Shown here: positions 811-51,949 of the stretch, piece after piece
Numbering within the stretch: position 1 is the stretch's first letter
How the letters are laid out: every line of letters starts with the position of its first letter
Assembly: GCF_001194135.2 (NCBI RefSeq)
Contig: NC_069002.1
Span: forward strand, 14,363,991-14,424,559
Origin: Octopus bimaculoides
Taxonomy: Eukaryota
Direction of reading: 5' to 3'
DNA length: 60,569 nucleotides
Notes under the pieces: model-generated
Told to the model about the DNA's origin: nothing
Databases searched by the model: none
The model's input: the letters and a program-made list of their open reading frames with translations, nothing else
Position numbers and translations under genes: made by a program

Positions 811-1090
811 GTACCAGTTACGCACTGGGGTCGATGTAATCGACTTAATCCCTTTGTCTGTCCTTATTTATCCCCTCTATGTTTAGCCCCTTGTGGGCAA
901 TAAAGAAATAAGAAACGTTNNNNNNNNNNNNNNNNNNNNNNNNNNNNNNNNNNNNNNNNNNNNNNNNNNNNNNNNNNNNNNNNNNNNNNNNACCAGTTAC
1001 ACACTGGGGTCGATGTAATCGACTTAATCCCGTTGTCTGTGCTTGTTTTTACCCTCTATGTTTAGCTCCCTGTGGGCAATAAAGAAATAA
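811..1090 (+). mobile_element. Two tandem 3' halves of SINE family A, separated by an N gap
   Basis: accagttac-cactggggtcgatgtaatcgacttaatccc...gtgggcaataaagaaataa occurs at 813 and 992, with several substitutions between copies. The same sequence is in the fuller copy at 20836-21070. Confidence 0.85.
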
Positions 1091-18914: not shown

Positions 18915-19531
18915 GTGTGTGTGTGTGAAGTCATGCAAGAACAAAGATTATGAATTAGAATATTGCCACACACACACACATACATACACGCACACAAACA
19001 CACATGTATATATATGGTCTATAATATATCAACTAAAGACAAAATGTTAACTACTTCGCCATCCTCTTCGGTTGACAAGGACATTTGAACATCTTACTAC
19101 AAAGATTTCAAATATCGTTGTCGAAGAATTACTTATTCATCGAACAATTCTCTTTATCCATGTCAACAAATGTATCGGGTTTTTATTTTCTTTCTTGATG
19201 TTTATTTCGTGATTTTATGGCAAAGTTTATATTTCCCTCAAAAAGGTCAGAATAAGGTCAAAACAAGTATGACATTGTCTGCTGTTCTTCGCGCAAGAGT
19301 TGAAACAATATAAGTCATTATTCTTTAATACTCTATTTTCTCCGCCCGCTATTTTCTTCCTCCTTTGTTATGTAATGATCTCCGCTATAAAATATATTAC
19401 CAGCATTTAGTTATTGCTGTTATTGTTAAGCGGTTGTTTAGCACATGGTTAGCTTGGATTTAACCAGCATATGTTCAAATTCATGTTTACAAGGGTACCA
19501 GCGGGTACCCCTGCATACATACATACATACA

Positions 19532-19894
19532 TTCAGAGATTTAACGTTGCTTGTTTTCACTTTTTTGAGATCAGTGAATAATTTCACTGGAAAAAGTTAT
19601 ATATATATGCAAAGGGAAATCTTTCGCATCGAAGGTCGGCGATTCTCGTACGCTGAGGACGGGAAAATACCCAGAGACTCGAGTCCGTACGTATCGCAGA
19701 TCAAGATGAGAAGGATGGCTTCCCTTTGCAAATAGACAGGACACAGATGTGTGTCGATAGCCAGCTGGAGGAGATGTTCTCCTGGGGCTAAAAGCAACAG
19801 TAACATCCACCCTTAGGGGTCAGCCACATTTAAGTGGCAAATATACTTCACCTTGTCATGCAGTTACTGTTAATACCTCGTTCAGAGATTTAAC
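19532..19894 (+). mobile_element. Candidate retrozyme: 349-nt highly structured monomer bounded by the 14-nt direct repeat TTCAGAGATTTAAC
   Basis: The direct repeat is at 19532-19545 and 19881-19894. The unit has at least six pairing elements and contains a hammerhead motif. It lies between (ATAC)n and (TA)n microsatellites. Confidence 0.7.
19647..19691 (+). ncRNA. Type I hammerhead ribozyme motif, A14G variant, probably inactive
   Basis: cgtacg-CTGAGGA-c-ggg-AAAATA-ccc-a-GAGA-ctcgag-TC-cgtacg. Stem I is 19647-52/19686-91, the CUGANGA core 19653-59, stem II ggg/ccc with loop AAAAUA, then GAGA in place of GAAA, a short palindromic stem III, and a GUC cleavage triplet ending at 19685. Confidence 0.8.
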
Positions 19895-19928
<34 letters not shown>

Positions 19929-20307
19929 ATATATATATNNNNNNNNNNNNNNNNNNNNNNNNNNNNNNNNNNNNNNNNNNNNNNNNNNNNNNNNNNNNNN
20001 NNNNNNNNNNNNNNNNNNNNNNNNNNNNNNNNNNNNNNNNNNNNNNNNNNNNNNNNNNNNNNNNNNNNNNNNNNNNNNNNNNNNNNNNNNNNNNNNNNNN
20101 NNNNNNNNNNNNNNNNNNNNNNNNNNNNNNNNNNNNNNNNNNNNNNNNNNNNNNNNNNNNNNNNNNNNNNNNNNNNNNNNNNNNNNNNNNNNNNNNNNNN
20201 NNNNNNNNNNNNNNNNNNNNNNNNNNNNNNNNNNNNNNNNNNNNNNNNNNNNNNNNNNNNNNNNNNNNNNNNNNNNNNNTATATATATATATACATACAT
20301 ATATACA

Positions 20308-28042: not shown

Positions 28043-28166
28043 TACATATACATGTATTCACTAAATATATGTGCATCTGTTCGTGGAATGCTCATCCACT
28101 TACATGTGCAAATAACTGCATATACCACGGTCAGTTGTAATAGTAGTAGTAGTAGTAGTAGTAGTT

Positions 28167-28217
<51 letters not shown>

Positions 28218-28288
28218 TGTTTCGGACATCCAGAAATTGCTATGAAAAAGAACCTAAACATAAAGTCGAGATAGAGTGGGAAAAGACG

Positions 28289-28360
<72 letters not shown>

Positions 28361-31300
28361 ACTGCTACATCTGCTGCTGCTGTTGCTGGTGTTGCTCTTA
28401 CTGCTGCTGCTGCTGATATTGCCGGCTGCTGTAGCTACTACTGCTGCCGCTGCCACCACCACCACCACCACCACCACCACTGCTACTGCCTCTGGTGCTG
28501 CTGTTGCAGCTAAAGCAACGCGTGAGAGACATAATTTATATGACAGGACAAAACCGAATGCAAGTGCTTCTTTATTGAAATTCAACTTCGGTTTCCATTA
28601 TATATATGCACGTGTATATCTCCGTATATATATATATATATATNNNNNNNNNNNNNNNNNNNNNNNNNNNNNNNNNNNNNNNNNNNNNNNNNNNNNNNNN
28701 NNNNNNNNNNNNNNNNNNNNNNNNNNNNNNNNNNNNNNNNNNNNNNNNNNNNNNNNNNNNNNNNNNNNNNNNNNNNNNNNNNNNNNNNNNNNNNNNNNNN
28801 NNNNNNNNNNNNNNNNNNNNNNNNNNNNNNNNNNNNNNNNNNNNNNNNNNNNNNNNNNNNNNNNNNNNNNNNNNNNNNNNNNNNNNNNNNNNNNNNNNNN
28901 NNNNNNNNNNNNNNNNNNNNNNNNNNNNNNNNNNNNNNNNNNNNNNNNNNNNNNNNNNNNNNNNNNNNNNNNNNNNNNNNNNNNNNNNNNNNNNNNNNNN
29001 NNNNNNNNNNNNNNNNNNNNNNNNNNNNNNNNNNNNNNNNNNNNNNNNNNNNNNNNNNTATATATATAATATATATATATATACAAATATATGCATATAT
29101 CTATACACTTACATACATACGTGCATATGTACAAGGAGGCATATATGTATGTACGCACGTACGCATGAATGTATGTATGTATGTATGTATGTATGTATGT
29201 ATGTGCGTATGTGTAGGATATAGACACAAGTAAATGATATTAGAGAAAATGTAATTGCTTGCTGGATGTAGTTATATATAAAATGAGTTTTCCTAAAGAA
29301 TGAAGTTGCATAGAAACAAGTTCTGTTTTAAAACGGACCAAGAAAAACTTAAGAAATTGATGAATAAGCCAACCACATTAAACACACATACACACGCACA
29401 CGTCTTATAATTCTTTATAATCTAAAACCAGATTTTCATTCAACATCGGTTGATAGTTTTTTGTTGTTTTTATTTTTTGGTCATTCACCATGCGAGACGT
29501 TCACGTTTGAAGAATTACTCAGAAAAATTATTTTATCGATTCGATATTAAGATTGTACATGTGTCTGTGTTGGTTTTGAACGTATGTGTTTGTTTGTTCT
29601 GTAAATATATTTTCTTGCTCAAATCTAACAGACATCTAGTTTCAGAAATAAAATGAAAATATGTACAAACATATTTTGTGGGGCGAATTAAATTGTGAGA
29701 TTTTTTTTTTAATGTTGAAATCAGTGAAGAAAATATGCGACTAGAAATGAATCGGCGAAGTTAGAGGAATAACAGACGTTTTTATTTCTGCTGCTATTGT
29801 TTTTGTTGTTGGTGTTCTTGTTGTTGGTGTTGTTGTTGTTGGTGTTGTTGTTGTTGGTGTTGTTTACTGTCATCGTAATTGAGGAATCACGTGATGAGAC
29901 GTAGTACAACATGATCATGCAATTATTTGATTTCGGACAAATATCTAGTATTTATTGTATTGTTTTGTTAAAGCGTCTGACTGTGACTTGGTGGAGATTA
30001 TTTGCCGGCAAAATTTACGAAATGAAACGACCAAACGCCCTCCACTGTTGGCTTATATTTCCTTGTTTATACATACAGGAATATATTGAGAACATTGCAG
30101 ATGATTGGTAAAGTGCCATGGTAGTATATCGTATGTGATTTCAGGTTCCTTTTCCTTCTCAGCAAATAGTGTAAGGTCGCAGAATGTTAGGTCCTAGAAG
30201 GAAGGCATTTAAAACAGAAACTTACGTTCTATGCTCTGCTTTCAAATTCCTCTGTATTTGGCCTTGCCATTTATTCGTATGATGGTGGTAAAATACTTGA
30301 CGATTATATCTGGTTAGCCGTGCTACCAAAGTATTGAATATATTTGAACGTAGTTTCAAATTTTGCAAAGAGAATATATAAAACGGATCTCTGCTTAAAT
30401 GTGAACATAAAACCCTTAGAGAAAACTTTTGACAGTAAAATAAAAGAGCATTTGAGTGCGTTTATACCTTATTAAAAGAGAGTTTATTTTTCAAAAGCAT
30501 CAATGCTATATTAGTTTTTTTCCCCCTGCATTCTATCATAAACATTTTCGGTTGATTCCAAATTCTGCATTTCGTGTCGTGAGGTAAAAATTTAGATTTT
30601 TTTGAAGTGAATAAACTTGGTGCCTACCAGTAATGTTGTTGAGAAGGGAGAAGACTCTTTCAGAAAAGAAAGTTTATGAAAGATTTTGACAACGATGGAA
30701 ACAATATTCGACGATACTTTTTAATTTGAGGGTTGATGCAACAATTTTTTTAGGAATTTTACTTCATTCTGAAGCAGAATTTGTAATGTCTGATCCTTTC
30801 CATTCGTTATAGGCATCCATTAATGTCCATTATTTATTTATTTTGACAAATTTCAGAACAAATAGTAGACTTGATTTCAGTTTCCTTCAGGAACATTTGT
30901 TAGGACCAGTACCTCAAGTAATTCGTGTGAACGGTTAATAAGATACGCTGAATTTTTTCCCGTTTTAAGCAAAGACAAGAATTTGAAATATTTAAACGAA
31001 ATGAAATCTTGCAGTTCTTTCTGGAAGATTTTGGCAAATCATCCAAATAAATGTTATGTACGGTGGCATCACAATAATTGCCTCCTACTCGGAGATATGT
31101 TGAAAGATCATTAATTCTACTTCTGTTCTAACTGTATCGTTGCATTTCAAAGTATTGTATTCCAAACAATTTTTGATAACAATTTTAATCTAGAATTAGT
31201 AGAATTCCTAAACTTAAGATTCTAAAGGATTCTGCTTGAAATCCCAAATTAAAGTTAAGCAATATCTAAGCTAAGAAAGCTCAATATAGTGTTGTTAAGG

Positions 31301-33805: not shown

Positions 33806-36197
33806 TATTTGTAGAATCTCAAAATTCTTTGTTTTTTATTTAACGCTGAAACATGAAAGTGCTATTTGAAGCTGGCAGCTGGCAGCTCAATGGAAACTTT
33901 AGACTGGCTCAAGAGTAGCGTAATGTTTGAAGATTTAAAAATTGCTCCGCTTGAAGGAATGTTGAACTCTTCAGAACCCCATCAAGATCATATTAACATT
34001 AGATTTACACACGTGATTCTAATATTGTTTTTGAAAATAAACTATATAAAATTCTAAATACCAGGAGGAATTGTTTTTAATTTTTAAAAGTATTGGGAAT
34101 TCGCTCACTTTTATTTTTAAACTGACAACGTTATAGTATTCAGTTACCTTCAATTTGACTGTACTTTCATTTGACTGGAGCAAACTCGACGATTATTTTA
34201 CAATTTTTGCTAAAACTCTGGGTAAATCATCTAAAAAGGCAACTGATAAATCTGTGTTCTGAGATATATCAGGGGAGGTTGAACTTGGCTGTTGTCTGTG
34301 CTGGGCAGAGGAAGAGTGAAAATAAATTTTATGTAATCTTTTCTGTTATTCCTACTTGTTTCATTTTTTGTATTCAGATTTGAATTAAAATATTGACGAT
34401 TTACTGAGATTTTTCTGTGGAACTTAATGGCAAAAATTAAAAAGAAAATAGAAAGAATGTTACGTATTTGTAAATTTGAAGGAACTTTTTCAGACAGACG
34501 CATACGCACACGCGCACGCGCGAGCGCACACACATGCACATACGATACACGCAGGCACAAGTGTGAGTGTGTAGCAATAAGCTTGCTTTCTAGCCACGTA
34601 GTTCCGCGTTCAGTCTGTTCTCATTGGCTATTGCTTTTTACGCAAATATATCTTTGTGTGGTTATTGTTTTGTGGGTTTCTATGACCTGCGTTTGTTTAA
34701 AATTTAAATGGTATTATGTGTTACATATATCTGTTTCGGATCAGTGTTACCTGAAATTTATCGCTATCAGCTGATATTGTTTTGTGATAGAAACTTCAGT
34801 GAAATATTTTTACGCCTCAAAGGACAAGAGCTGATATCAGCGTAGGATCAAAGAACTAGCTGAAAGTTCGCTTCAGACGATGCAACAATACAGCTTCTAC
34901 TTTTAAATGCAAGACTGCTTTTGTTATAGCATGAAAAATAAACAAATATGGTACCAAAGTATTGCAAAACCTCTGATTCAACACAATATTAAAAGAAAGG
35001 TTATTCGTCCCTGTATGGAATCAGTGTTAATAAACATCAAACACATTAATGGACATCAAACAAGTAGATACAATGCTTAGTGTTGTTTACGCTTGCACAT
35101 CACAGAGCCGTTATGAATATCTCGTAGGAAAAGTATCAGAACAAACAATACATGACAACTTCCTTGTAATTAGTTGTTCCACAGAGAAGTATCTAAAAGG
35201 GTGCACGTGAATTGAAGCAGAACTTCATGAATGATATACATTTTTGAACACCGGTTGGTCGTCCATCAAAATCCTTCAGTGACCAGTTCTGTACCGACAC
35301 CGTTTTCTTTTGGTGGACATGGAGGGGAATATTTCATGGTAATATTCTGTGGGTTATTTTNNNNNNNNNNNNNNNNNNNNNNNNNNNNNNNNNNNNNNNN
35401 NNNNNNNNNNNNNNNNNNNNNNNNNNNNNNNNNNNNNNNNNNNNNNNNNNNNNNNNNNNNNNNNNNNNNNNNNNNNNNNNNNNNNNNNNNNNNNNNNNNN
35501 NNNNNNNNNNNNNNNNNNNNNNNNNNNNNNNNNNNNNNNNNNNNNNNNNNNNNNNNNNNNNNNNNNNNNNNNNNNNNNNNNNNNNNNNNNNNNNNNNNNN
35601 NNNNNNNNNNNNNNNNNNNNNNNNNNNNNNNNNNNNNNNNNNNNNNNNNNNNNNNNNNNNNNNNNNNNNNNNNNNNNNNNNNNNNNNNNNNNNNNNNNNN
35701 NNNNNNNNNNNNNNNNNNNNNNNNNNNNNNNNNNNNNNNNNNNNNNNNNNNNNNNNNNNNNNNNNNNNNNNNNNNNNNNNNNNNNNNNNNNNNNNNNNNN
35801 NNNNNNNNNNNNNNNNNNNNNNNNNNNNNNNNNNNNNNNNNNNNNNNNNNNNNNNNNNNNNNNNNNNNNNNNNNNNNNNNNNNNNNNNNNNNNNNNNNNN
35901 NNNNNNNNNNNNNNNNNNNNNNNNNNNNNNNNNNNNNNNNNNNNNNNNNNNNNNNNNNNNNNNNNNNNNNNNNNNNNNNNNNNNNNNNNNNNNNNNNNNN
36001 NNNNNNNNNNNNNNNNNNNNNNNNNNNNNNNNNNNNNNNNNNNNNNNNNNNNNNNNNNNNNNNNNNNNNNNNNNNNNNNNNNNNNNNNNNNNNNNNNNNN
36101 NNNNNNNNNNNNNNNNNNNNNNNNNNNNNNNNNNNNNNNNNNNNNNNNNNNNNNNNNNNNNNNNNNNNNNNNNNNNNNNNNNNNNNNNNNNNNNNNN

Positions 36198-36586
36198 GTT
36201 TCACTGGTACTTAATTTATCGCTCCCGAAAACATGAAAGGCAAGACAGTGGACCTCAGTAGAATTTGAACTCAGAACGTAGGGATGGGCGAAATGCCGCT
36301 AAGCAGTTTTCTCGGCCTACCAACCATTCTGCCAGTTCGCCAATAAAAATAATAATAAAACTAATAATCATATCTACTCTAGACACAATGCCCGAAATTT
36401 TGAGAGAAGGGGGCCAGTCGATTACATCGACTCCAGTGTTTCACTGGTACTTAATTTATCGCTCCCGAAAACATGAAAGGCAAGACAGTGGACCTCAGTA
36501 GAATTTGAACTCAGAACGTAGGGATGGGCGAAATGCCGCTAAGCAGTTTTCTCGGCCTACCAACCATTCTGCCAGTTCGCCAATAA
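36198..36586 (-). repeat. Tandem duplication of a family A SINE, period 240 bp
   Basis: 36198-36346 is identical over 149 bp to 36438-36586. The first copy abuts an 837-N gap. Confidence 0.9.
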
Positions 36587-50405: not shown

Positions 50406-50905
50406 CAAGGGTACTACGTGAGCACCTGCATCGTTAATAGAAGTAAAGAATACTTCTGTGCCACGGAATAGTCACAAAATTAATACAAGCATGGTTGGAA
50501 AAAATTCTAGTGAAGAATAAAATCGTCTTACCGCAGCAAAAGTAATGCTGGTTAGTTTGGTATAATGATTACGAATTTAACGCTAAACGGTACCTCATTC
50601 TCGTCAGTGGTGTCTGGCCACTACAAAAAAAAAAAAAAAAANNNNNNNNNNAAAAAAAAAAAAAAAAACAATTTGCAAGCATAGTGGAGGTAAATTTTAG
50701 TAGTTGTTGGGTGGCAAGTTTGGCTGAAGATAATCAGGCACCGCAAGGCGCTAAATTCGAAATCATGATATCAAACTAACCAGCATTTATTGTTCCCAGG
50801 AATTTTTCCCTATGATGGTTGTATTAATTATGTAACTATTCCGTGGATGAGAAGAATTTTTTTATTTCCATCTTTAGCGATGCATGTGCTCACGTAGTAC
50901 CCTTG
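50406..50905. mobile_element. TA-flanked foldback MITE with long terminal inverted repeats, about 500 bp
   Basis: The first 20 bp, CAAGGGTACTACGTGAGCAC, match the other end perfectly (27/28 when extended). Further internal matches are ccacggaatagt...aattaatacaa and atgctggttagtttg...atgatt-cgaattta. Both ends sit in (TA)n. Confidence 0.9.
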
Positions 50906-51949
50906 TATATATATATATATATATATATNNNNNNNNNNNNNNNNNNNNNNNNNNNNNNNNNNNNNNNNNNNCATATACATATATATGTTTGAATGATTAG
51001 ATGTGCTTGACCCACGATGATTAAATCACGAAGGTTGGTTTCGGCTCCAAAGTTAATGGCGTTAAACTCCTTCCGTTCCATATGCACCGAGGTCCTTCAT
51101 ATTATTATTTCCCTTATATATATATATATAGTGTTCAGACAGAGAACTCACACACACACACTCACACTCGCGCGCAAGCATATATATTCCTTCTCTAATG
51201 ATACCAGGTGAGCGAAAATTATGCTACAATTAAGTACACAAATGCAAAGTACAGTGCAGTGAAATTGAACCGAAAATGTCTCAGTCACATATTTTTAAGA
51301 CGGCAGTGTATGATGTGAATGAGACTTGGCTCCTAATTCAAGTCGATCGAGCTACTATGGAGAGACGTCATCAGCAAAATCCCATCCCCACCAGGTACTG
51401 TCAGGTGCTTTATTCGTTAATGTTATTATGTCGAAGTTATTGTTCTAGTTTGATGTTATTTTAATGCCAGTGGTCTTATTCTCTTTAAGATAATTCATTT
51501 CAGTGGAAGCCATATTTAATATCTCTCTCGGCTTTCAAAGCCATTTTTAGAATTACCTGCAACAATTCAGGTATTATGAAAGCATTCTACAATAAATACA
51601 TTAACTGGACGAATGTTTGTCTAATGAGTATATATCTAACTTGGTTTAGAAATAAAATATCCTACTGGCCATATACCAAGAATCGCCACAAGTCAAAGAG
51701 TTATATGTTTGTAGTACACATTTAGTTGGTTCATATGTAAGATTGAATGAAATAGAAAGGCGAGCAGCTGACCAATAGCAATCCTGCAGCTGTAGGATTG
51801 TTGAGAATTACCCACAAGCTAGTAACAGTTTTCACAGTCAATACTACACAGCATTAATGTAGTAACAAGCAACGGCTATTAAACTGTAGTTTAGACTAGG
51901 GCAACGAAGCTAAAATTCTAAGATCGATTATATAAACATTAGCACTAAT

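What the first reader, a model, noticed from the sequence alone, without database searches (positions are those of the whole stretch)
19532..19894. 349-nt, almost fully base-paired unit with terminal 14-nt repeat: candidate cephalopod retrozyme / circRNA element
Stem I extends into a long rod: 19639-43/19693-97, 19634-37/19699-702, 19619-30/19705-16 (11 of 12 pairs) and 19608-18/19720-30 (11 bp perfect). Flanking hairpins are cagtgaa/ttcactg (19572-89), gacaca/tgtgtc (19740-55), aggaga/tctcct within agcc/ggct (19759-89), and a 9-bp stem aacagtaac/gttactgtt (19796-804/19863-71) enclosing accc/gggt and gccac/gtggc. TTCAGAGATTTAAC recurs at a 349-nt period. Non-LTR retrozymes of other animals (schistosomes, cnidarians, mussels, salamanders) are known to be a few hundred nt, to carry type I hammerheads and to yield abundant circular RNAs. 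That this is such a family in an octopod is inference, and I cannot confirm whether it is already described. The repeat could be a TSD or terminal redundancy of a monomer. More hairpins lie just upstream (19446-65, 19493-510), and a 321-N gap follows, so the boundaries are uncertain.
Basis: partly seen in the sequence, partly recalled or inferred. Interest (0 to 1): 0.85.

Follow-up and report, generated by a model that had tools for sequence, protein, structure and literature searches.

The report
Degenerate hammerhead-bearing retroelement copy, octopus
This is a real, unusually well-folded 349-base repeat element carrying a slightly broken hammerhead-ribozyme-like motif. It is most likely a dead single copy of a "retrozyme"/Penelope-related mobile element in an octopus genome, an expected extension of a known class rather than a new kind of thing.

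Summary
The 349-nt unit folds far better than shuffles (z -6.0 linear, -6.3 circular). Only 65% of bases are paired, so the structure is branched, not "almost fully paired".

At the tip of the longest arm (19647-19691, + strand) is a type I hammerhead layout with typical metazoan dimensions. It has a 6-bp helix I, a 3-bp GC helix II, and a 2-bp helix III with a palindromic tetraloop, followed by GUC. The core reads GAGA instead of GAAA (G at A14, position 19676), the base of helix II is mismatched, and Rfam gives no hit.

The only database relative is a 54-aa Octopus bimaculoides "protein" (A0A0L8IHK6), which is a frame-shifted translation of a paralogous copy. Back-translation of that protein implies a canonical GAAA and a compensated helix I change.

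The locus holds 1.04 units inserted in a (TACA)n/(TA)n microsatellite. The cleavage site is internal, and there is no tandem array and no neighbouring PLE ORF.

Best reading (about 0.55): a solo, inactivated copy of a hammerhead-bearing, Penelope-dependent non-autonomous retroelement (non-LTR retrozyme-like). Copy number, tandem arrays and circular RNA could not be tested here. It is a new member of a known kind, of moderate to low interest.

The parts
19532..19545 (+). First copy of the 14-nt repeat TTCAGAGATTTAAC, at the left boundary directly after (TACA)n
19546..19880 (+). 335-nt body of the element. With one 14-mer it makes the 349-nt unit, 43.6% G+C
19881..19894 (+). Second copy of the 14-nt repeat, at the right boundary directly before (TA)22 and the N gap
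19604..19734 (+). Long imperfect hairpin arm (-54.7 kcal/mol) with the hammerhead-like motif at its tip
19647..19691 (+). Type I hammerhead-like motif: CGUACG | CUGAGGA | C-GGG-AAAAUA-CCC-A | GAG | ACUCGAGU | C^ | CGUACG. The predicted cleavage site lies between 19685 and 19686. An internal loop (UCU/U) and the closing stem 19639-43/19693-97 continue helix I into the arm
19676..19676 (+). G at core position A14 (GAGA instead of GAAA), expected to inactivate this copy. The paralogue's Phe codon requires A here
19676..19685 (+). 10-nt palindrome GACUCGAGUC covering helix III. It allows a two-molecule (double-hammerhead) helix III
19572..19589 (+). Hairpin cagtgaa/ttcactg
19740..19755 (+). Hairpin gacaca/tgtgtc. 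The paralogue differs only in the loop
19759..19789 (+). Hairpin agcc...aggaga/tctcct...ggct, the part best conserved in the paralogue
19796..19871 (+). 9-bp stem aacagtaac/gttactgtt enclosing two small hairpins
19642..19806 (-). Stretch matched, with two frameshifts, by the O. bimaculoides protein A0A0L8IHK6 (P0001). This is a non-coding paralogue read as an ORF
19514..19531 (.). (TACA)n microsatellite, left flank (insertion target)
19895..19938 (.). (TA)22 microsatellite, right flank, followed by N gap 19939-20279 and then (TA)n(TACA)n

Best explanation
The locus is a single, slightly longer-than-unit (1.04x) DNA copy of a small non-coding, hammerhead-bearing, non-autonomous retroelement of an octopus. 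It belongs with the metazoan non-LTR retrozymes and the Penelope-like-element (PLE) pLTR derivatives.

Inferred life cycle of the family:
1. Tandem or multimeric + strand transcripts fold a type I hammerhead. Its weak, palindromic helix III probably works through a two-copy (dimeric) hammerhead.
2. Cleavage after GUC (the equivalent of 19685) releases ~349-nt monomers, which a host tRNA-type ligase circularises.
3. A PLE reverse transcriptase/GIY-YIG endonuclease copies the highly paired circle at a nick in a microsatellite.
4. Running slightly more than once round the circle gives the 14-nt terminal redundancy.

This particular copy is a dead end. It has one cleavage site only, and its core carries G instead of A14.

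Shown here: the structure, the motif, the repeat, the microsatellite setting, and the existence of a diverged paralogue.
Inferred: ribozyme activity of the family, circular RNA, PLE dependence, and the origin of the 14-mer.
For: Structure:
- z -6.0 linear and -6.3 circular. It is the most structured non-microsatellite segment of the window.

Motif at 19647-19691:
- It has every element of the canonical metazoan type I hammerhead as described in PMC4209133: a 6-bp helix I followed by an internal loop and a closing stem; a short helix II; a 2-bp helix III capped by a 4-nt palindromic loop; a G-C pair at 10.1/11.1 with an extra nucleotide after A9; and a GUC cleavage triplet.
- With a compact descriptor allowing one core mismatch it is the only hit in the window, and 0 of 150 dinucleotide shuffles give any hit.
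- In silico the two-copy form is 10 kcal/mol better than two monomers, through the GACUCGAGUC palindrome.

Paralogue:
- O. bimaculoides A0A0L8IHK6 (P0001) matches 19642-19806 on the - strand: tblastn E 2e-10, 55% identity, with two frameshifts, so the relationship is at DNA level.
- In the gapless hammerhead part its codons require CNGANGA, A at 19676 and 19677 after G19674 (GAAA under the minimal-change back-translation, where Phe is TTT), H17 = A, and U49-A89 changed to G.U in helix I. The core is kept and helix I is compensated. At least 18 of 84 positions differ.

Locus layout:
- The cleavage site lies in the middle of the copy (unit position 154/155), so the template was circular or multimeric, not a cleaved linear monomer.
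- The element is inserted in a compound (TACA)n/(TA)n microsatellite. PLEs show microsatellite insertion bias and short terminal 'tails' (PMC8557442).

Literature context:
- Retrozyme cDNAs are expected to exceed unit length (PMC7761336).
- Monomeric derivatives are common.
- Octopus genomes hold active Penelope families (PMC13282606).
- Retrozymes are known in another mollusc, Mytilus (PMC7229834).
Against: - No Rfam hammerhead model matches at gathering score, at E<=10 on 541 nt, or at E<=10 on 65 nt.
- The core of this copy is non-canonical (G at A14) and the pair next to the core in helix II is C.A.
- A looser descriptor gives about four loci per window, so the motif's significance depends on thresholds chosen after seeing it.
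- There is only 1.04 units here, no second copy in the 60-kb window, and only one relative in 5.8 billion proteins. A six-frame query found nothing more.
- The paralogue's nucleotides are inferred from a protein: third codon positions and two Ser codons are ambiguous. An alternative alignment with three indels would keep GAGA; by hand scoring it is less parsimonious, and the frameshift-aware alignment kept this stretch gapless.
- The hammerhead segment is the more diverged part of the paralogue, not the most conserved.
- No PLE ORF lies nearby.
- The 14-mer could equally be a target-site duplication.
Confidence: 0.55

Rival explanations
1. A 5'-truncated copy, or solo pseudo-LTR, of an autonomous Penelope-like element. 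Only the last ~335 nt (19546-19880, containing the pLTR hammerhead) were reverse-transcribed at a microsatellite target. TTCAGAGATTTAAC is a 14-bp target-site duplication, not part of the element.
For: - PLE pLTRs carry type I or minimal hammerheads with palindromic helix III, an extra nucleotide after A9 and G10.1-C11.1 (PMC4209133). All three are seen here.
- PLEs prefer microsatellite targets and are often truncated (PMC8557442).
- Octopus genomes have dozens of Penelope families.
- The copy is single, and the 14-mer is unlike the microsatellite flanks.
Against: - No RT or GIY-YIG ORF is found anywhere near.
- The pre-insertion site would need a 14-nt unique island exactly between two microsatellites.
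- The strong overall self-pairing (z -6) is the hallmark described for retrozyme circles rather than for PLE UTRs.
- The distinction is partly semantic, since retrozymes are reported to derive from pLTRs.
Confidence: 0.2
2. An unrelated interspersed repeat, for example a LINE-mobilised SINE-like retroposon with a 14-bp TSD or a (TGTA)n tail on the - strand. Its internal inverted repeats give the stable fold, and the hammerhead resemblance is fortuitous.
For: - A 14-bp direct repeat is a typical LINE-type TSD length.
- SINEs and LINEs are the most abundant octopus repeats, and a LINE-type RT fragment lies in the same window at 55944-56458.
- Rfam finds no hammerhead and the core is imperfect.
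- Both strands fold well, as expected for DNA-level inverted repeats.
Against: - No tRNA-like head is found by ARAGORN and there is no ordered A/B box pair.
- There is no poly(A) or simple-repeat tail inside the direct repeats.
- The compact hammerhead layout was never produced by 150 shuffles.
- The paralogue keeps the core and compensates helix I.
Confidence: 0.15
3. A host structured non-coding RNA gene or long hairpin (for example a small-RNA precursor), or a foldback/MITE-type DNA element.
For: There is a very stable ~130-nt hairpin arm and several local hairpins. A foldback unit flanked by (TA)n exists elsewhere in the window at 50406-50906.
Against: - No Rfam family matches.
- There are no terminal inverted repeats at 19546/19880, and 14 bp is longer than the TSDs of DNA transposons as I know them (own knowledge).
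- The paralogue is at least 20% diverged with indels, like a decaying repeat rather than a conserved gene.
Confidence: 0.05

Closest known systems
Metazoan non-LTR retrozymes (Cervera and de la Pena 2020, PMC7229834), e.g. Mytilus galloprovincialis, Acropora millepora, Ambystoma mexicanum
   Same: - Unit of 170-400 nt, G+C below 50%, non-coding, highly self-paired.
- A type I hammerhead with a 6-bp helix I and a weak 2-bp helix III with a tetraloop.
- Direct repeats at the ends longer than 4 bp.
- Monomeric genomic derivatives exist.
   Different: - A single 1.04-unit copy instead of a tandem array.
- The hammerhead core is mutated at A14 and the helix II base is mismatched.
- No evidence here for expression or circles.
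- I found no report of cephalopods as hosts in the searched literature.
Hammerheads in the pseudo-LTRs of Penelope-like elements (Cervera and de la Pena 2014, PMC4209133; Craig et al. 2021, PMC8557442)
   Same: - Extra nucleotide between A9 and 10.1, and a G10.1-C11.1 pair.
- Palindromic helix III/loop 3, suggesting action as dimers.
- Insertion into microsatellites and short terminal redundancy ('tail').
- Octopus genomes carry Penelope families.
   Different: - No RT/GIY-YIG ORF adjacent.
- Helix I is long (6 bp) and helix II short, like 'canonical' retrozyme hammerheads rather than PLE minimal hammerheads (helix I 4-5 bp, helix II 7-8 bp).
- The whole unit is strongly structured.
Newt/salamander satellite 2 and Schistosoma Sm-alpha hammerhead repeats
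   Same: A repeat of roughly 330-350 nt with a type I hammerhead whose weak helix III with a palindromic loop favours cleavage as a double hammerhead.
   Different: Those are large tandem arrays or SINE-like families with intact cores and proven cleavage. Here there is one degenerate copy and an unknown copy number.

Membership tests
Hammerhead ribozyme, type I | Conserved core C3-U4-G5-A6-N7-G8-A9 ... G12-A13-A14 ... 15.1-16.1 pair, H17 | tested here: not met
   The window copy reads CUGAGGA ... G-A-G ... A/U, C17, with G at A14 (19676), so 12 of 13 core positions are met. The paralogue's codons require A at 19676, so the family ancestor probably met this feature. That is an inference.
Hammerhead ribozyme, type I | Three helices around the core, with helix I open and continued into the rest of the RNA | tested here: met
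   - Helix I: 19647-52/19686-91, 6 bp.
- Helix II: 19661-63/19670-72, 3 G-C pairs plus C.A.
- Helix III: 19677-78/19683-84 with loop UCGA.
- This is the only hit in the window and none appears in 150 shuffles.
Hammerhead ribozyme, type I | Match to the curated covariance models (Rfam Hammerhead_1 and relatives) | tested here: not met
   No hit at gathering score on the whole window. No hit at E<=10 on 541 nt or on 65 nt.
Hammerhead ribozyme, type I | Site-specific self-cleavage | not testable with these tools
   This needs in vitro transcription of monomeric and dimeric constructs. In silico the active fold costs +6 kcal/mol relative to the MFE in a monomer, and the dimer is favoured by 10 kcal/mol.
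Metazoan non-LTR retrozyme | Monomers of about 170-400 nt, G+C below 50%, non-coding, highly self-paired | tested here: met
   349 nt, 43.6% G+C, z -6.0/-6.3. The ORFs are broken by frameshifts between copies.
Metazoan non-LTR retrozyme | Head-to-tail tandem repeats (dimers to multimers), each with a hammerhead | tested here: not met
   Only 1.04 units are present. After the second 14-mer the sequence is (TA)22, not the unit. There is no other copy in the window. The 341-N gap starts 45 nt later, beyond the microsatellite.
Metazoan non-LTR retrozyme | Multicopy family in the genome | tested here: inconclusive
   There is one diverged paralogue, seen through O. bimaculoides protein A0A0L8IHK6. 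No octopus genome was searchable, and the pattern scans of metagenome, viral and prokaryote collections were empty.
Metazoan non-LTR retrozyme | Abundant linear and circular monomer RNAs | not testable with these tools
   No transcriptome was accessible.
Penelope-like element (pLTR or truncated copy) | Continuity with, or proximity to, an RT plus GIY-YIG ORF | tested here: not met
   No gap-free ORF of at least 110 aa lies between 12214 and 21827, and the ORFs screened gave no PLE domain. Of the stop-to-stop segments of at least 75 aa, the only one I recognised by eye as RT-like is LINE-like, at 55944-56458. Short degenerate fragments were not excluded.
Penelope-like element (pLTR or truncated copy) | PLE-type hammerhead traits and microsatellite target | tested here: met
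   There is an extra C after A9, G61-C72 as 10.1/11.1, and a palindromic ACUCGAGU. The flanks are (TACA)n and (TA)n. The criteria come from PMC4209133 and PMC8557442.
tRNA-derived SINE | tRNA-like head with A and B boxes, plus a LINE-type 3' tail | tested here: not met
   ARAGORN finds nothing in the window. The A/B box matches are only 2-mismatch and in the wrong order. There is no tail inside the direct repeats.
MITE / foldback DNA transposon | Terminal inverted repeats and a short fixed-length TSD | tested here: not met
   The ends gttgcttg... and ...aatacctcg are not inverted repeats. The direct repeat is 14 nt, longer than DNA-transposon TSDs as I know them (own knowledge).

The most novel reading that the evidence does not exclude
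Octopods harbour a still-active retrozyme family, mobilised by their Penelope elements, that produces abundant ~350-nt highly structured circular RNAs. This copy would be a fossil of that family. It would be the first ribozyme-processed circRNA system described in cephalopods, a group already noted for unusual RNA biology.
Probability: 0.3. Interest if true: 0.55.

Novelty: new member of a known kind. Interest (0 to 1): 0.3.

Why it matters
If the family consensus has an active hammerhead and occurs in tandem arrays, cephalopods join cnidarians, bivalves, rotifers and amphibians as hosts of retrozymes. Octopus would then offer a system in which ribozyme-derived circRNAs and their Penelope partners can be studied, since recently active Penelope families are reported there. 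For genome annotation, it shows that at least one O. bimaculoides 'uncharacterized protein' (A0A0L8IHK6) is a translated repeat, not a gene. As a single locus it has no evident function: it is a decayed insertion.

Tried and rejected
- Rfam, at gathering score on the whole window and at E<=10 on 541 nt and on 65 nt: no hammerhead or other credible family.
- BLASTN with word size 7 of 19401-19900 against the window: only microsatellite hits and no second copy.
- Exact-pattern scans for the hammerhead segment and for the segment best conserved with the paralogue, in metagenome, viral and prokaryote genome collections: nothing, as expected for animal DNA.
- Protein-space trick. The 79-aa - strand ORF found nothing. 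The 69-aa ORF found P0001. A 1757-aa concatenated six-frame query of this element and of the 50406-50906 unit found nothing at E<=10 and did not even recover P0001, so that negative result is weak.
- Exact-product look-ups for P0001 and two window ORFs: not on record, so no DNA of the paralogue and no better assembly of the gap.
- Full-text search for the motif strings: only shRNA-loop matches.
- The supplement list of the O. vulgaris repeat paper holds a single 6.4-kb docx, too short for a repeat library; I did not open it.
- tRNA/SINE test and A/B boxes: negative.
- I considered a link to the foldback unit at 50406-50906. Only its terminal ~30 nt resemble 19487-19516, upstream of and outside the element, and there is no similarity to the element itself. 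I rejected it as part of the finding.
- I considered an alternative three-indel alignment of P0001 over the hammerhead, which would keep GAGA. By my hand scoring it is less parsimonious, and the frameshift-aware alignment kept this stretch gapless at every penalty tried.

Full report
**Observation.**
- the rod segments 19639-43/19693-97, 19634-37/19699-702, 19619-30/19705-16 (11 of 12) and 19608-18/19720-30 (11 bp perfect);
- the hairpins at 19572-89, 19740-55 and 19759-89;
- the 9-bp stem 19796-804/19863-71 with two enclosed hairpins.

TTCAGAGATTTAAC is exact at 19532-45 and 19881-94.

The 349-nt unit folds to -120.7 kcal/mol, against -87.0 +/- 5.6 for dinucleotide shuffles (z -6.0). The complement gives z -5.1. 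As a circle the unit gives -115.9 kcal/mol, z -6.3. Among 312 sampled 349-nt windows of the 60-kb sequence it is second only to a pair of complementary trinucleotide microsatellites.

- Only 65% of bases are paired, so this is a branched structure with one ~130-nt arm, not an almost fully paired rod.
- The N gap is 19939-20279 (341 N).
- A 14-mer repeat at 100-500 nt spacing occurs somewhere in 25% of shuffled windows. Its weight comes from its position, exactly at both junctions between unique sequence and microsatellite.

**The hammerhead-like motif.**
The tip of the long arm reads, on the + strand, CGUACG | CUGAGGA | C GGG AAAAUA CCC A | GAG | ACUCGAGU | C | CGUACG (19647-19691). This is the order and size of the 'canonical' metazoan type I hammerhead as described in PMC4209133:
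- a 6-bp helix I followed by an internal loop (UCU/U) and a closing stem (19639-43/19693-97);
- a short helix II with a G-C pair at 10.1/11.1 and an extra nucleotide after A9;
- a 2-bp helix III capped by a palindromic tetraloop;
- a GUC triplet.

Two things are wrong for an active ribozyme. Position A14 is G (19676, GAGA instead of GAAA), and the nucleotides flanking helix II next to the core form C.A.

No Rfam hammerhead model matches, whether at gathering score, at E<=10 on 541 nt or at E<=10 on 65 nt.

A loose home-made descriptor (one core mismatch, any helix sizes) finds about four loci in the window, so at that level the motif means little. With the compact dimensions typical of metazoan hammerheads, the candidate is the only hit and none occurs in 150 dinucleotide shuffles of the window. 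The thresholds were chosen after seeing the motif, so this is supportive, not decisive.

The monomeric active fold is 6 kcal/mol worse than an alternative helix. Two copies pair through the 10-nt palindrome GACUCGAGUC with a 10 kcal/mol gain. This is the behaviour reported for newt, axolotl and PLE hammerheads that act as dimers (PMC7229834; PMC4209133).

**Relatives.**
There is no second copy in the window. No animal genome can be searched with these tools, so I searched protein space with the accidental ORFs of the element.
- The 69-aa - strand ORF (19600-19806) has one relative among 1.8 and 5.8 billion proteins: P0001, UniRef A0A0L8IHK6_OCTBM, a 54-aa 'uncharacterized protein' of Octopus bimaculoides. 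tblastn back to the window gives E 2e-10.
- A frameshift-aware alignment shows that P0001 follows the window's frame, jumps to another frame for YRHTTVSC, and returns. The relationship is therefore between two non-coding DNA copies, not proteins.
- Over the hammerhead the alignment is gapless at every frameshift penalty tried.

Back-translation then constrains the paralogue as follows:
- The first core strand is compatible with CUGAGGA.
- The Phe codon opposite 19675-77 forces A at 19676 and 19677. After G19674 the core reads G-R-A-A, which is GAAA under the minimal-change back-translation (Phe = TTT).
- H17 is A.
- The helix I pair U19649-A19689 becomes G.U (both sides changed, pair kept).
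- Helix III stays palindromic if the Ser codon is TCN.
- At least 18 of 84 positions differ.

These are inferences from a protein. Third codon positions and the two Ser codons are open. Even so, they point to a family whose ancestor had a canonical core, with this copy being a mutated fossil.

Other searches found nothing: the other ORF, a six-frame concatenate, exact-product look-ups and pattern scans of the metagenome, viral and prokaryote collections. Copy number therefore remains unknown.

**Context.**
The element lies inside a compound microsatellite: (TACA)n on the left, and (TA)22, the gap, then (TA)n(TACA)n on the right. The predicted cleavage site (19685/19686) is in the middle of the copy. 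The template was therefore not a cleaved linear monomer but a circle or an uncleaved multimer.

The locus contains 1.04 units. After the second 14-mer comes (TA)n, not the unit. It has a single cleavage site and cannot release a monomer itself.

Negative context findings:
- No tRNA-like head or ordered A/B boxes.
- No terminal inverted repeats.
- No PLE ORF nearby.

**Comparison with the known.**
Non-LTR retrozymes are 170-400-nt, low-GC, highly paired tandem repeats with type I hammerheads. They are expressed as circles in cnidarians, a mussel and salamanders (PMC7229834; PMC7761336). Their cDNAs are expected to exceed unit length, and monomeric derivatives are frequent (bioRxiv 10.64898/2026.07.22.740005).

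The same preprint argues that animal retrozymes derive from PLE pseudo-LTRs. PLEs insert preferentially in microsatellites and leave short terminal extensions (PMC8557442). Octopus vulgaris has 30 recently active Penelope families (PMC13282606). I found no paper in the library describing hammerheads or retrozymes in cephalopods.

**Verdict.**
The retrozyme reading is partly supported:
- The best explanation (about 0.55) is a solo, inactivated, slightly over-length copy of a hammerhead-bearing, PLE-dependent non-autonomous retroelement.
- A truncated PLE/pLTR copy with a 14-bp target-site duplication (about 0.2) cannot be separated from it without octopus genome data.
- A SINE-like repeat with a fortuitous motif (about 0.15) also remains possible.

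This is a new member of a known kind. It is worth a genome-wide follow-up, but not surprising to a specialist.

Noticed in passing
window 50406-50906: A ~500-nt foldback unit flanked on both sides by (TA)n. It has two ~230-nt arms that are about 80% complementary, separated by poly(A) and a 10-N gap. The right arm holds a hammerhead-like string with an intact core (CUGAAGA ... GAAA, palindromic AUCAUGAU, 7-bp helix I, 50717-50780), but its helix II is long and irregular and Rfam gives no hit. It could be a MITE or a PLE-type inverted insertion.
   Followed up: partly
window 19487-19516: Just upstream of the element, TACAAGGGTACCAGCGGGTACCCCTGCAT resembles the terminal ~30 nt of both ends of the 50406-50906 unit (TACAAGGGTACTACGTGAGCACCTGCAT).
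   Followed up: partly
window 28130-28480: (GTA)n followed by (CTA)n/(CTG)n/(CCA)n. These are complementary trinucleotide microsatellites that give the most stable fold in the window (-172.8 kcal/mol for 349 nt). The overlapping ORF gave a spurious SR-25 Pfam hit.
   Followed up: yes
window 55944-56458: Two overlapping + strand reading frames with LINE-type reverse-transcriptase motifs (…GKAPGPDSIPAEVFK…, …HRGISLL…). The Pfam RVT_1 hit is weak (E 0.005). This is a decayed non-LTR retrotransposon fragment, not a Penelope-like element.
   Followed up: partly
window 823-1077 and 36198-36445: Unique-sequence direct repeats lie next to N gaps. One pair (179 nt apart) spans gap 920-991. The other (240 nt apart) starts right after gap 35361-36197. 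They look like assembly duplications at gap edges. Overall, 20 gaps make up 11% of the window.
   Followed up: no
UniProt A0A0L8IHK6 (P0001), O. bimaculoides: This annotated 54-aa 'uncharacterized protein' is a frame-shifted translation of a copy of the repeat studied here. It is almost certainly not a gene.
   Followed up: yes
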